From the IMG/VR virus record IMGVR_UViG_3300024503_000485, positions 62,001 through 126,000 of that record: DNA of 64,000 bases. The stretch is one strand, 5' to 3'. Below the pieces are notes generated by a model. That model saw only the letters and a list, made by a program, of their open reading frames with translations. It did not search any database and had not been told where the DNA came from. How positions within the stretch are numbered: the first letter of the stretch is position 1; each line of letters opens with the position of its first letter. The position numbers and the translations under genes are program-made. Of the stretch, positions 7,342 to 55,174 are shown in pieces.

Positions 7342-7782
7342 TTATCTACGTTTTTTACCTTGATGAAAAATATCGCCTTCGTTTACAATACGAAATCTTA
7401 CACCTTGCTGTTTACACCACTTACTAGCAGCTTCCCATTTGGCCATATTTTTTACATATTGTTCCTGGTTATAAAGACTTTTTCCAACACTTTCTAATTT
7501 AGTTTGACTTTCCGGTTTTACTTCTACAACTTCTGCATGTTTATTTCCGTTCTTATCAACATAGACAATAAAAAAATCTGGGACATACACGGTATATTTT
7601 CCTGTTAAAGGATCTCGATAAGGTATTTGTATACTTTCGCTAGCCCAATTTTGAACGCCCTGATGTTCATCAAGCATTCTCATAAAAATAAATTCCCAGC
7701 TACTACGAGCTAACGGTGTTTTTTTCCCAACGTATTTGTCGGGATTTTTCATCTCAAACCTTCCTGATGCAAATTTAGGCAT
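7342..7782 (-). CDS. gp4: Head completion nuclease (T4 gp4-like, TnsA-type PD-(D/E)xK)
   Basis: KNPDKYVG, RSSWE, WASE, YVPDF, VEVKP, KWEAA motifs. Confidence 0.9.
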   Translation of the reverse strand: MPKFASGRFEMKNPDKYVGKKTPLARSSWEFIFMRMLDEHQGVQNWASESIQIPYRDPLTGKYTVYVPDFFIVYVDKNGNKHAEVVEVKPESQTKLESVGKSLYNQEQYVKNMAKWEAASKWCKQQGVRFRIVNEGDIFHQGKKRR

Positions 7783-49202: not shown

Positions 49203-50258
49203 TTATCCTAATGTCAATGCATATTTGATTGCAATGTCGTTTGCTGTACCTTCAGAAACAGCACCAATGGTACCTGCCGGACTGGCCCAAACTAATCCGT
49301 CCCAAATTTCTAAAGCCTTGGAGTCAGTATTATAACGAGTCATACCAACTTCTAGATAAGGTGCTACTGGTCTTTGTCCAGAAGTTCCTTTAGGTGGAAC
49401 AAACGCATTTGTTCCTGTGATTTTAAAATACCCTGCACCAGATTGTACAAATTCAGTAACAGAATTTGAAACCGTATTTGTAATTACATTATCTCTAATA
49501 GAAAAATTACCAACTCTTAACGCACCAGAGCCGTTTGGATCTAAAATTAAATCTTGCCCTGATGTTGTGGTGATTGTATTATCAAATATTGTTATGCTTC
49601 CAACATCAAAAGTGTTTAAATTTAAAGTATTAGCATAAAAATTATTAGCATAGATATCTTTCCATCTATTTCCTGATGAACCGATATCATAAGTATTATC
49701 TGTTTCTGGTACTAGGTCGCTTTTAATACTAGCGTTAATTGTAACGGTATCGAATAAACTATCACCGATTACTAAATTGCCGCCAATTGTAACATTTCCT
49801 GTAGCATTTATGTTTCCGCCAATTGTAACATTTCCTGTAATGTTTGCAGAACTTTGAATGTCAACTATTCCTGTTCCGTTAGGGCGTAATTCTAAATTTG
49901 AATTAGAAACGGTTGTTGAAATAGTGTTATTATTAAGTTCTAGATCATTAACAATTAGTCTAGAATGGTATGCTGTTGCCTCACCGCCTGATGCGGTAAA
50001 GCTAATAGTTGGAAGTGTGCTGTTGATTGTGTTACCAGAAATGGTAAAGTTACCAATATCAAATTGATTAGTAACTTCTAAATCTGTTGTTCTGGTTGTA
50101 CCTACTACGTCTAGGGCGAATTGTGGATCAGCAGAGTTTATGCCAATCTTGGAGTTGACTACATCAAGATACAGAAGGTCGGTCTCAAAAGCCAAATTCA
50201 CACCATCTCTAATGAGATTGGCTTTTAAGAGCGGCCCGGAAATACGACCAATCGCCAT
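49203..50258 (-). CDS. Tail fibre-like structural protein
   Basis: Start MAIGRISG (ATG 50258, GGGGAG SD); LLYLDV.N.KIGIN, L.L.PNG.G repeats, P.GT..QRP..GM.RYNTD; ends YALTLG. Confidence 0.75.
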   Translation of the reverse strand: MAIGRISGPLLKANLIRDGVNLAFETDLLYLDVVNSKIGINSADPQFALDVVGTTRTTDLEVTNQFDIGNFTISGNTINSTLPTISFTASGGEATAYHSRLIVNDLELNNNTISTTVSNSNLELRPNGTGIVDIQSSANITGNVTIGGNINATGNVTIGGNLVIGDSLFDTVTINASIKSDLVPETDNTYDIGSSGNRWKDIYANNFYANTLNLNTFDVGSITIFDNTITTTSGQDLILDPNGSGALRVGNFSIRDNVITNTVSNSVTEFVQSGAGYFKITGTNAFVPPKGTSGQRPVAPYLEVGMTRYNTDSKALEIWDGLVWASPAGTIGAVSEGTANDIAIKYALTLG

Positions 50259-50370
50259 ACGCTCTCCCCTAGACACCGTGTTTCACGGATAACCACTTTT
50301 TCAGCTGTTCGCTCTATGCGGGTTTACCACAGGTTAATTTTACAAGAAAATTGGTCTTCTCTTGCAATTA
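50259..50370 (-). promoter_or_regulatory. Structured ~110-nt 5' leader (candidate cis-regulatory RNA) after late promoter TAAATA at 50380-50375
   Basis: Stems TTGCAAGAGAA/TTTTCTTGTAA, TAACC/GGTTA enclosing TGTGG/CCGCA, and CCGTG-AAA-CACGG before the SD. Confidence 0.5.
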
Positions 50371-50394
50371 GTAGTATTTAGTCGTATAGGAAAA

Positions 50395-51534
50395 TTAACC
50401 CACTACAAGGGCCCAAAGATTAGTAAGCTCTTCCATGATAGGTAATGTAACTACAACGCCACCACCAGTGGCTACGGTATAAACATTACCATCAAAACAC
50501 TCTAAATAACCTTTTTCGGTATTCCAGCGAGTGTCACCTTCTTCAATGTATGGACGCTGAGAATTATTACCTACAGGAACAACTACACCAGTATCTGTAT
50601 TAAATTTTGTCCATCCAGCGGCAGTTTGTGTAATAGTAATTGGGGTATTTTCTAAGTTTGTTATAACACCAGCGTTTATATTAATCTTTTCTAATGTTAT
50701 ATTCCCAGATGCTGAGTCAAGTACAAGATCGTCGTTGCTTTGAATTGTTGATATTGTATGTCCTGTTATTAGTGTTTGCCCACTAATAATTAAATTTGTT
50801 GTATTAATGCTTGTAACGCCCGGATCGTCATAAAACCAAAATTCTGCCCAGCGTTTGTTTGGTTTTCCAAGATCGTACAGGTTGTTATCTCCAGGAATAA
50901 TACTTTGTGTAAAGTCCGGAGATACAACAACGGTATCAACAGCGTTATCGCCAATGGTTAGTGTACCGTTAAATTGTAAATTACCTGCGGCACTGATATT
51001 TCCTCCTACAGACAAATTATTATTAATATTAACACTTGACTGAAAATCAACTATTCCTGTTCCGTGAGGATCTAATATTAAACTTGTATTTGTAGTTGTA
51101 ACATTAATGTAATTGTCTTTTAATTCTAATTTAGGATTTGTAACTTTTCCATATTCAACATACGGATTACTACCTTGAGGTTCAATAATAATAGGACCCA
51201 CGGTAGAAGTTATTGAGCCTGTAGAATTAAAAACAATATTATCAAATGTAGCTGTGGTTCCGCTGGCTATAAAATTATCTGAAACTTTAGTTTTTCCAAT
51301 AACTTCAAGTGCAAAATTTGGATTTTCTTTGTTAATACCAATCCTATTGTTATTAACATCAATATATAAAAGATCAGGATCGGTTGATGTATTTCTAAAT
51401 GTAAGATCTACACCGTTTCTTAAAAGATTTTCTTTTAATAATTTTCCACTAATTCGCCCTAGGGCAGAGGCAGGATTATATTCATCGCCACCAAACCCTT
51501 CGCTAAATCCACCATCTGAAATAATATCTGACAT
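50395..51534 (-). CDS. Tail fibre-like structural protein, paralog of 49203-50258
   Basis: LGRISGKLLKENLLRNGVDL, LLYIDVNNNRIGIN, QRP..EGDTRWNT. Confidence 0.75.
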   Translation of the reverse strand: MSDIISDGGFSEGFGGDEYNPASALGRISGKLLKENLLRNGVDLTFRNTSTDPDLLYIDVNNNRIGINKENPNFALEVIGKTKVSDNFIASGTTATFDNIVFNSTGSITSTVGPIIIEPQGSNPYVEYGKVTNPKLELKDNYINVTTTNTSLILDPHGTGIVDFQSSVNINNNLSVGGNISAAGNLQFNGTLTIGDNAVDTVVVSPDFTQSIIPGDNNLYDLGKPNKRWAEFWFYDDPGVTSINTTNLIISGQTLITGHTISTIQSNDDLVLDSASGNITLEKININAGVITNLENTPITITQTAAGWTKFNTDTGVVVPVGNNSQRPYIEEGDTRWNTEKGYLECFDGNVYTVATGGGVVVTLPIMEELTNLWALVVG

Positions 51535-55106: not shown

Positions 55107-55124
55107 ACCAATATTTAAGTCAAA

Positions 55125-55150
55125 CAAAAAGCCCCTTGCGGGGCTTTTTG
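55125..55150 (-). terminator. Intrinsic terminator after major capsid gene
   Basis: CAAAAAGCCCC-GCAA-GGGGCTTTTTG. Confidence 0.9.
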
Positions 55151-55174
55151 AATTTCGCTTATGAAATTTACTAA

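What the first reader, a model, noticed from the sequence alone, without database searches (positions are those of the whole stretch)
50259..50380. Multi-stem 110-nt leader upstream of a fibre gene: candidate novel cis-regulatory RNA
Seen: an unusually long non-coding gap for this dense genome, starting right after TAAATA. It has an 11-bp hairpin with GACCAA loop, a junction closed by TAACC/GGTTA containing TGTGG-TAAAC-CCGCA, and CCGTG-AAA-CACGG just before the SD. Two GTGGT copies could pair with the ACCA loop (pseudoknot or alternative fold). Inference: a riboswitch-like or protein-binding leader controlling the downstream fibre operon.
Basis: partly seen in the sequence, partly recalled or inferred. 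Interest (0 to 1): 0.6.

Follow-up and report, generated by a model that had tools for sequence, protein, structure and literature searches.

The report
Conserved pseudoknotted leader of fibre gene
The roughly 110 bases between a T4-type late promoter and a tail-fibre-like gene of an uncultured river jumbo phage form a conserved, pseudoknotted RNA leader that recurs in over 100 related phage contigs, matches no known RNA family, and probably sets how much of that fibre protein is made.

Summary
All genes here are on the minus strand. The gap is 50259-50394 (136 nt). TAAATA (50380-50375) is not the upstream stop codon. It is an invariant T4-like late-promoter element, and the genome encodes a gp55-like late sigma factor.

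From about 50369 the transcript folds into four parts:
- P1, an 11-bp hairpin near the 5' end.
- An H-type pseudoknot (P2 plus AACCC pairing with G.GGUU).
- P3, an optional hairpin, usually GNRA-capped.
- P4 (CCGUG-AAA-CACGG), followed by the SD.

I found 107 distinct versions in at least 120 IMG/VR contigs. Each sits directly before the same MAIGRISG-type gene, with one strong copy per genome. On 79 non-redundant leaders, 91% of cells pair, 21 of 30 pairs show compensatory changes, and no shuffle reaches this.

The P1 loop GACCAAU more likely pairs with codons 3-5 (AUUGGUC) than with the GUGGU copies. There is no match in Rfam or in GenBank phages.

The function is inferred, not shown. The most likely role is cis control of translation or mRNA stability of a low-copy fibre protein. 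Riboswitch, protein-operator and antitermination readings remain open.

The parts
50395..51534 (-). Upstream paralogous fibre-like gene (379 aa). It carries the same GRISG..LLK.NL motif at residues 26-38. Its stop TAA is at 50397-50395.
   Evidence: phrog_1325 weak hit
50375..50380 (-). TAAATA, a T4-type late-promoter -10-like element. It is invariant in all leaders.
   Evidence: Invariant columns and present in all 80 loci. 36% of the genome's TAAATA copies lie in the 6% of sequence that is intergenic. A gp55-like sigma factor is encoded in the genome.
50369..50369 (-). Predicted transcription start. Inferred from T4 geometry, where +1 lies 6 nt after the last A of the motif. Not shown.
   Evidence: Inference. 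RNA-library contigs could not define a 5' end.
50340..50367 (-). P1, an 11-bp hairpin near the 5' end: 50367-50357 pairs with 50350-50340, with loop GACCAA at 50356-50351. The stem sequence varies freely; the loop is conserved in most leaders.
   Evidence: All P1 pairs show compensatory changes, and there are many G.U pairs on this strand only.
50317..50331 (-). P2 (pseudoknot stem 1): UGU 50331-50329 pairs with GCA 50319-50317. The enclosed loop GGUAAACCC is nearly invariant.
   Evidence: UA to AU double change, plus UG to CG or UA.
50291..50324 (-). Pseudoknot stem 2: AACCC 50324-50320 pairs with G 50296 and GGUU 50294-50291. U 50295 is bulged.
   Evidence: 99.5% of cells paired; CG 47, AU 19, GC 7, GU 3, UA 2 at one pair; AU 72 and UA 5 at another; GGGC/GCCC in L020.
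50303..50313 (-). P3, a small optional hairpin in pseudoknot loop 3 (AGC-GAACA-GCU here). It is absent in 55 of 98 leaders. Elsewhere there are one or two hairpins, mostly capped by GNRA or UUCG.
   Evidence: 26 GNRA and 2 UUCG among 47 loops; stems vary fully.
50276..50288 (-). P4 hairpin CCGUG-AAA-CACGG. The apical sequence G-N-A-A-C is conserved. The flanking bases covary as A.G, U.U or U.G.
   Evidence: CG to GC swaps in 8 of 79 leaders; flanks.
50262..50269 (-). Shine-Dalgarno region GGGGAGAG. GGAG is invariant and the following AGC is conserved in most leaders.
50246..50252 (-). AUUGGUC (codons 3-5), the exact complement of P1 loop GACCAAU. Candidate long-range kissing site at +7 to +13.
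   Evidence: 88.9% of cells paired. Compensatory cases: L119/L159 (GUCCAA with UUGGAC), L043 (ACCUA with UAGGU), L080. Both sides are lost together in two clades. Synonymous recoding weakens the duplex.
50224..50234 (-). CCGCUCUUAAA (codons 9-12), conserved at synonymous sites despite using rare codons. It is complementary to the SD flank GAGAGCG and to AAGAGC in loop 3.
49203..50258 (-). Downstream fibre-like gene (351 aa, MAIGRISGPLLKANL...). It is followed by 110-aa and 124-aa genes and then by 1832-aa and 3071-aa tail-fibre genes.

Best explanation
The region is the 5' leader of a late mRNA. A T4-type late promoter (TAAATA, read by host RNA polymerase with the phage's gp55-like sigma factor) starts transcription about 6 nt downstream of the motif. 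The RNA then folds on its own into a compact structure:
- a hairpin (P1) 2-3 nt from the 5' end;
- an H-type pseudoknot with a nearly invariant core;
- an optional tetraloop-capped hairpin (P3);
- a conserved hairpin (P4) 8-15 nt before a strong SD.

I propose that the leader acts in cis on this one gene in two ways. P1 shields the 5' end from 5'-end-dependent decay. The initiation region is closed by two long-range contacts: the P1 loop GACCAAU with codons 3-5 (AUUGGUC), and the SD flank GAGAGC(G) with codons 9-11 ((C)GCUCUU). Ribosomes would then load mainly on nascent or transiently open transcripts, which keeps the output of this fibre-like protein low and fixed relative to other late proteins.

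Shown: the conservation, the covariation, the pseudoknot, the strict linkage to this gene, a single copy per genome, and presence of the region in RNA libraries.

Inferred: the transcription start, the two long-range contacts, and the direction of the effect on translation.
For: - Structure: on 79 leaders no more than 90% identical, 91.4% of cells pair, 21 of 30 pairs have compensatory changes, 0 of 500 shuffles reach this, and slid controls give 34-47% paired (the 27-leader set is).
- Strand: frequent G.U pairs in P1 fit only the minus-strand transcript.
- Optional P3 hairpins carry GNRA or UUCG loops.
- Linkage: the core pattern hit at least 120 IMG/VR contigs, once each. In the 80 loci examined, the 79 with downstream sequence all have SD plus ATG of an M-x-[IV]-GRI[ST]G gene directly after it.
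- Copy number: the covariance model finds one copy in the window's genome and one strong copy in each of five other 195-270 kb contigs.
- Distant homologues of the gene (L044, L057) have short leaders without the structure.
- Promoter: TAAATA is invariant and enriched about sixfold in intergenic DNA. A gp55-like sigma factor is present (phrog_12791, E = 1.8e-82).
- Loop-CDS contact: compensatory changes in L119/L159, L043 and L080, and joint loss in two clades. For the window's own sequence the duplex is -10.4 kcal/mol against -5.1 +/- 2.0 for synonymous recodings.
- Anti-SD contact: codons 9-12 keep CCG CUC (12% and 3.3% of their codon families in this genome), whereas the upstream paralogue encodes the same LLK as UUA UUA AAA. 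The native SD-CDS duplex is -10.45 against -7.5 kcal/mol for recodings.
- Expression: contigs from four river metatranscriptomes span the leader and the gene.
Against: - No transcription start, half-life or translation measurement exists.
- The RNA-library contigs run 70-200 nt upstream of TAAATA, so read-through transcripts or DNA carry-over are possible.
- The loop-CDS and SD-CDS contacts rest on few independent events. They are absent in the MAVGRITG clade and in the L012 group.
- RNAalifold predicts nothing for the initiation region alone.
- The per-sequence recoding tests are weak: median fraction 0.10-0.12.
- The near-invariant unpaired nucleotides of the pseudoknot core (GGUA; AA..UG.AA) suggest a specific partner, either a ligand or a protein, which simple structural throttling does not need.
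- GGU is a favoured Gly codon anyway.
Confidence: 0.45

Rival explanations
1. Operator for an RNA-binding protein. A phage or host protein, possibly the unassembled fibre protein itself, binds the invariant pseudoknot core or the P4 loop and represses or activates translation. T4 gp32, RegA and gp43 act on their targets in this way.
For: Some unpaired nucleotides are nearly invariant (ACUGUGGUAAACC, the P4 apex G-N-A-A-C) while the stems vary freely. There is one copy per genome, tied to one gene.
Against: No candidate protein was identified. T4 RegA has no tblastn match in the 62%-complete genome. The gene product looks like a structural fibre protein, not a nucleic-acid binder.
Confidence: 0.22
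2. Riboswitch. The pseudoknot is an aptamer for a small molecule. Binding shifts the anti-SD-like CGCUCUU between the SD flank and the AAGAGC of loop 3, making fibre synthesis conditional.
For: It has the hallmarks of aptamers: a compact H-type pseudoknot with an invariant core, variable and optional peripheral stems capped by GNRA loops, and a position directly before an SD. The MFE fold pairs loop-3 AGAGCG with CGCUCU, an alternative to the SD-flank pairing.
Against: No known class matches. 55 of 98 leaders lack the loop-3 AAGAGC, so that switch cannot be general. A structural gene is an unusual riboswitch target. No ligand clue comes from the gene context.
Confidence: 0.13
3. Processive antitermination signal (nut- or put-like). 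The promoter-proximal RNA, together with the boxA-like CGCUCUUAA at +26, modifies RNA polymerase so that it reads through the cluster downstream, which includes 5.5-kb and 9.2-kb fibre genes.
For: It lies directly after a promoter at the head of a cluster with 1832-aa and 3071-aa genes. CGCUCUUAA is conserved at synonymous sites and equals the lambda nutL boxA as I recall it (from memory, not tested). P4 can be drawn as a 4-bp stem with a G-N-A-A-C pentaloop closed by U-A, like boxB.
Against: The order and spacing differ from nut: the hairpin is about 60 nt upstream of the boxA-like word. The 3071-aa gene has its own TAAATA 27 nt before its start. The strict linkage to the first codons of one gene and the complementarity to its SD fit translation control better. 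No N-like protein is known here. No terminators were found to overcome.
Confidence: 0.08
4. Self-cleaving ribozyme or processing site that frees the fibre mRNA from read-through transcripts.
For: Pseudoknotted small RNAs with invariant cores next to phage genes have turned out to be ribozymes before (established knowledge: twister-sister, pistol, hatchet). Contigs in RNA libraries cross the promoter.
Against: No match to any ribozyme family in Rfam even at E up to 10. Contigs in four RNA libraries run uninterrupted through the leader.
Confidence: 0.04
5. There is no RNA function. The conservation reflects DNA-level constraints (a promoter, a recombination junction between fibre modules) or recent common descent.
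For: Leader and N-terminal coding sequence are conserved together while C-termini vary in length from 349 to over 500 aa, as at module borders.
Against: Compensatory double changes occur in four helices, G.U pairs occur on one strand only, and optional tetraloop-capped hairpins are present. The flanking proteins are only 58-73% identical.
Confidence: 0.03

Closest known systems
T4 gene 32 mRNA leader (pseudoknot translational operator)
   Same: The phage has a T4-like MCP (Gp23 family) and a gp55-like late sigma factor. An H-type pseudoknot sits in a 5' leader upstream of the ribosome-binding site. It acts in cis on one gene.
   Different: Gene 32 is not a late structural gene and encodes the protein that binds its own leader. 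There an unstructured A/U-rich tract links the pseudoknot to the RBS; here a conserved hairpin (P4) and a short spacer do. There is no sequence similarity.
5' leader of the maturation (A) protein gene of RNA phage MS2
   Same: A multi-stem leader and a long-range pairing cover the initiation region of a low-copy virion protein, so translation is limited to incompletely folded RNA. This is the working analogy for the proposed mechanism.
   Different: MS2 is an RNA genome with no promoter. In MS2 the partner of the SD lies upstream, whereas here the candidates lie in codons 3-5 and 9-11. Kinetic control has not been shown here.
H-type pseudoknot riboswitches (preQ1-I, SAM-II, SAM-V, guanidine-III)
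   Same: Small size (33 nt in the minimal form), H-type topology, an invariant core, a purine-rich loop 3, and a position before an SD.
   Different: No Rfam model matches even at E up to 10. The conserved nucleotides differ. The gene controlled is a virion protein, not a metabolic gene or transporter. Ligand binding is untested.
Lambda nut and HK022 put antitermination RNAs
   Same: Promoter-proximal structured RNA at the head of long transcription units. A boxA-like word and a boxB-like hairpin can be pointed out.
   Different: The order and spacing of the elements differ. The boxA-like word lies inside the coding sequence. There is no N homologue and no demonstrated terminators.
ompA-type 5'-terminal stabiliser hairpins
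   Same: A stable hairpin within a few nucleotides of the predicted 5' end.
   Different: Those need only a hairpin. Here the loop sequence and a further 70 nt of structure are also conserved.

Membership tests
Any Rfam 15 family | Score at or above the family's gathering threshold, or at least a credible E-value, against a covariance model | tested here: not met
   Permissive scans of 1101 nt and 165 nt around the leader gave only chance hits (E of 2.6 or more) that fall far below their gathering scores. Six other leader-bearing loci gave none at E up to 1. The whole window gave none at gathering thresholds.
Riboswitch (generic) | Conserved aptamer fold supported by covariation | tested here: met
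Riboswitch (generic) | Specific binding of a small-molecule ligand | not testable with these tools
   Needs in-line probing, ITC or similar.
Riboswitch (generic) | Expression platform with mutually exclusive pairings conserved across members | tested here: inconclusive
   CGCUCUU can pair with the SD flank or with loop-3 AAGAGC, but 55 of 98 leaders lack the loop-3 partner.
T4 gene-32-type autoregulatory leader | Pseudoknot followed by a long unstructured A/U-rich tract reaching the RBS | tested here: not met
   P4 hairpin and an 8-15 nt spacer lie between the pseudoknot and the SD.
T4 gene-32-type autoregulatory leader | The regulated gene encodes a single-strand nucleic-acid-binding protein | tested here: not met
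   The product matches tail-fibre-like families only.
Lambda-type nut site | boxA (CGCUCUUA) about 8 nt upstream of a boxB hairpin with a GNRA-like pentaloop | tested here: not met
   The boxA-like word is at 50233-50226, about 45-60 nt downstream of the only boxB-like hairpin (P4, 50288-50276). The consensus is recalled from memory.
T4-type late promoter | TATAAATA-like -10 element without a -35 element, used with a gp55-family sigma factor | tested here: met
   [ACT]TAAATA is invariant upstream of every leader and enriched in intergenic DNA. A gp55-like protein is present (phrog_12791 E = 1.8e-82; phrog_234 E = 6.5e-23). Use of this promoter in vivo is not shown.
Intrinsic terminator | G+C-rich hairpin followed by a U tract | tested here: not met
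   P1 is A/U-rich and followed by AAAAUUAACC. The scan lists no terminator inside the leader proper. The one listed site, 50413-50397, lies at the end of the upstream gene.

The most novel reading that the evidence does not exclude
The leader is a true sensor. Its invariant H-type pseudoknot would bind a small molecule or a host or phage factor and thereby decide whether the anti-SD-like CGCUCUU and the P1 loop close the initiation region. Synthesis of this fibre-like protein would then be conditional on the state of the infected cell. That would be a new riboswitch-like class, and I know of no other such switch that controls a virion structural gene of a jumbo phage.
Probability: 0.15. Interest if true: 0.85.

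Novelty: new variant of a known kind. Interest (0 to 1): 0.65.

Why it matters
Structured cis-regulatory RNAs are well known for bacterial metabolic genes and for a few early phage genes. Control of late structural genes is usually ascribed to promoters alone. Here one fibre-like gene, in a whole clade of uncultured freshwater jumbo phages, carries an elaborate, strongly conserved pseudoknotted leader, while many neighbouring late genes seem to have almost no leader at all. That points to post-transcriptional setting of fibre stoichiometry or timing.

The motif has over 100 natural variants with built-in compensatory mutations, so it is ready for reporter, probing and structural work, and for submission as a new RNA family. 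If it proves to sense a ligand or factor, it would link host-cell state to the make-up of the host-recognition apparatus.

Tried and rejected
Only 61% of cells pair and 75 of 79 leaders have an A.G mismatch. Rejected.
- **P1 loop ACCA pairing with either GUGGU copy.** 85-88% of cells pair, but both sides are almost invariant, and the loop variants GUCCAA and ACCUA do not fit these sites while they fit the CDS site. Kept only as a minor alternative.
- **GG/CC extension of P2 proposed by RNAalifold.** The pairs are invariant, so uninformative, and they compete with the covarying pseudoknot.
- **Extending the loop-CDS helix to the third base of the Arg codon.** No consistent covariation: 31 of 73 are Watson-Crick.
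- **RNAalifold on the initiation region alone.** No consensus structure.
- **Known families and cultured relatives.** Rfam, GenBank phages by megablast and blastn, and a literature search: nothing.
- **P1 as a terminator of the upstream gene.** No U tract.
- **T4 RegA, gp45 and gp44 homologues.** No tblastn hit, but the genome is only 62% complete.
- **Defining the 5' end from public RNA runs.** Only contigs are available. They cross the promoter and cannot show a start.
- **PA5oct transcriptome paper.** It reports sigma70-like motifs only and gives no help on late promoters.

The large protein searches, structure prediction and complex prediction were not used, because the question concerns an RNA.

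Full report
**Setting**

The window is part of a 219-kb IMG/VR virus record, estimated 62% complete. Its major capsid protein belongs to the Gp23 family. It is 66-72% identical to those of jumbo myoviruses such as PA5oct, GAP32, Phosso and Vibrio phage 2.275.O. Genes around the finding lie on the minus strand.

The gene after the gap (49203-50258, 351 aa, MAIGRISGPLLKANL...) gives weak matches to tail-fibre and virion families and to annotated fibre proteins of marine and freshwater phages. The gene before the gap (50395-51534) is a paralogue with the same N-terminal motif. Downstream follow two small genes and then 1832-aa and 3071-aa tail-fibre proteins (phrog_9851, E = 5.9e-189 and 4.1e-205).

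**Checking the observation**

The upstream gene, however, ends at TAA 50397-50395, so the gap is 136 nt (50259-50394). TAAATA at 50380-50375 is inside the gap rather than being the stop codon.

The single-sequence fold is only mildly better than shuffles: z = -2.06, and z = -1.86 with 45 nt of coding sequence added. On its own the sequence would not be convincing.

**The promoter**

- TAAATA, mostly as ATAAATA or CTAAATA, precedes every homologous leader.
- In the window's genome, 52 of 144 TAAATA copies lie in the 6% of sequence that is intergenic. Most of those are in sense orientation shortly before a start codon.
- The genome encodes a 282-aa protein matching the PHROG families for the T4 gp55 late sigma factor (E = 1.8e-82 and 6.5e-23). 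It lies next to a gp47/SbcD-like gene, as in T4.

From the established T4 rule (TATAAATA at -13 to -6) I infer a start near 50369. That puts the first paired base of P1 (50367) two nucleotides after it. This step is inference.

**Comparative evidence**

A search of IMG/VR with the fibre-like protein returned about 40 orthologous loci at 58-73% protein identity. Their upstream regions are plainly homologous and show visible compensatory changes.

I examined 80 of these loci, and 79 have sequence downstream of the hit. In all 79 the hit is followed by an SD and the start of an M-x-[IV]-GRI[ST]G-[PQ]-LLK gene. The products range from 349 to over 500 aa. In all there are 153 instances and 107 distinct leaders.

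On 27 leaders, 96.9% of cells pair and 17 of 22 pairs carry compensatory changes. On 79 leaders no more than 90% identical to each other, the results were:
- 91.4% of cells pair.
- 21 of 30 pairs carry compensatory changes.
- The covariation score is 0.280 against 0.120 for shuffles, and 0 of 500 shuffles reach it.
- Sliding the partners by 1-3 columns drops pairing to 34-47%.

Near-identical rows were collapsed. Loci without upstream sequence (L019, L032, L042) were left out.

**The structure**

- **P1.** A hairpin whose stem sequence changes freely: every pair has double changes, and there are many G.U pairs, which fit only the minus-strand RNA.
- **P2.** Three base pairs (UGU/GCA), with a UA-to-AU swap.
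- **Pseudoknot.** The P2 loop does not stay free. Its AACC-N pairs with N-x-GGUU 25-60 nt downstream. The N:N pair appears as CG 47, AU 19, GC 7, GU 3 and UA 2, with one mismatch. The neighbouring A:U becomes U:A in five leaders. One lineage has GGGC/GCCC. This is an H-type pseudoknot.
- **Loop 3 and P3.** Loop 3 is either 9 nt (55 of 98 leaders) or holds one or two hairpins with fully variable stems. Of their 47 loops, 26 are GNRA and 2 are UUCG.
- **P4.** It shows CG-to-GC swaps. Its flanking bases covary as A.G (77), U.U (21) and U.G (7).

**Specificity**

A covariance model built from the 79 leaders finds one copy in the window's genome (E = 2e-28) and nothing else at E up to 10. It finds one strong copy in each of five other 195-270 kb contigs. 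More distant homologues of the gene (36-41% identity; L044, L057) have short leaders of 12-25 nt after TAAATA and no structure. The leader is therefore an innovation of one clade, and it is tied to one gene.

**Long-range contacts (suggestive, not proven)**

*P1 loop and codons 3-5.* The P1 loop GACCAAU is the exact complement of AUUGGUC at codons 3-5 (50252-50246).
- Where the coding site is UUGGAC the loop is GUCCAA (L119, L159).
- Where it is UAGGU the loop is ACCUA (L043).
- Where it is UCGGU the loop is GCCGA (L080).
- In the L012 group (GGA AGA) and in the MAVGRITG clade (GUA GGU), the loop motif and the site are both gone.
- In the window's own sequence the duplex is -10.4 kcal/mol, against -5.1 +/- 2.0 for synonymous recodings. 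Over 77 leaders the means are -7.9 and -4.75.

*SD flank and codons 9-12.* Codons 9-12 are almost always CCG CUC UUA AAG. Yet CCG is 12% of Pro codons and CUC is 3.3% of Leu codons in this genome. The upstream paralogue writes the same Leu-Leu-Lys as UUA UUA AAA. CGCUCUU is complementary to the conserved SD flank GAGAGC(G), or to GGAGCG in another clade. The SD-CDS duplex is stronger than in recodings (-10.45 against -7.5 kcal/mol; control segment -6.0 against -4.8). The base after GAGAGC correlates loosely with the base before GCUCUU. The same word can also pair with AAGAGC of loop 3, and it equals the lambda boxA as I remember it. I could not decide between these readings.

**Expression**

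The phage comes from river samples. Six metatranscriptome runs hold 44-72% of the region's words. In four of these runs, contigs run through the fibre-like gene and the leader and end 70-200 nt upstream of TAAATA. Coverage over the upstream paralogue is patchy. Contigs cannot show starts or levels, and DNA carry-over is possible. This shows no more than presence in RNA libraries.

**Comparison with what is known**

No Rfam family matches the leader, six other leader-bearing loci, or the whole window. GenBank phages hold nothing similar, and a literature search found no description. Among 185,579 species genomes the pattern occurs once, on an 8.9-kb contig binned with a Crocinitomicaceae MAG.

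The nearest functional analogies are:
- the T4 gene 32 pseudoknot operator;
- the MS2 maturation-gene leader;
- small pseudoknot riboswitches;
- nut/put antitermination RNAs.

The leader fails the defining features of each family that could be tested (see the membership table).

**Verdict**

That a real, new, conserved pseudoknotted leader RNA exists is close to certain; I put it at about 0.95. What it does is inferred. I favour cis control of translation and stability of a low-copy fibre-like protein (0.45). After that come a protein operator (0.22), a riboswitch (0.13), antitermination (0.08), a ribozyme (0.04) and no RNA function (0.03).

Noticed in passing
window minus strand, e.g. 3509, 5107, 6849, 9247, 15206, 26224, 55112 (position of TAAATA): About 17 genes in the genome have their ATG only 5-8 nt after TAAATA and have no SD. 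If transcription starts about 6 nt after the motif, as in T4, these late mRNAs would be leaderless or nearly so. That is unusual for a phage with a T4-type late system, and it contrasts sharply with the 117-nt fibre leader.
   Followed up: partly
G000:C1:131028-131165 minus strand (L191:1229-1366), outside the window (would be window 69028-69165): There is a strong match to Rfam RF01718, Polynucleobacter-1 RNA (100 bits, E = 7.7e-22). It lies in a 946-nt stretch where my ATG-only ORF caller found no gene. By eye, that stretch also seems to read as a GIY-YIG-like homing endonuclease frame. This may hint at a freshwater betaproteobacterial host.
   Followed up: partly
G000:C1:135206-136054 minus strand (L188:1207-2055): The gp55-like late sigma factor is 282 aa, about 100 aa longer than T4 gp55 (185 aa). 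The T4-like part lies at residues 150-257. The gene sits next to a gp47/SbcD-like gene, as in T4.
   Followed up: partly
window 50224-50234 minus strand: CCGCUCUUAAA in codons 9-12 of the fibre-like gene is conserved at synonymous sites despite using the rarest Leu codon. It equals the lambda boxA word as I recall it, and it is also an anti-SD. Its role is unresolved.
   Followed up: partly
window 55107-55174 minus strand: A textbook intrinsic terminator (GCCCCGCAAGGGGC followed by a T run) lies directly after the major capsid gene. It is followed within 10 nt by TAAATA and a start codon 6 nt later.
   Followed up: no
L190 (JBDNIA010000328.1, 8.9 kb), 7492-7539 minus strand: This is the only occurrence of the leader core among GTDB species genomes. 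It lies on a short contig binned into a Crocinitomicaceae (Bacteroidota) MAG and is probably a phage fragment. As a host clue it conflicts with the frequent SD sequences in the phage and with the Polynucleobacter-1 hit.
   Followed up: no
window 50381-50394 minus strand and homologous positions in L002-L186: By eye, a short conserved word (UUCCAA or UCCAAW) lies 6-10 nt upstream of TAAATA in most leaders, between the upstream stop codon and the promoter. It may be an upstream promoter element or part of the end of the upstream gene's mRNA.
   Followed up: no
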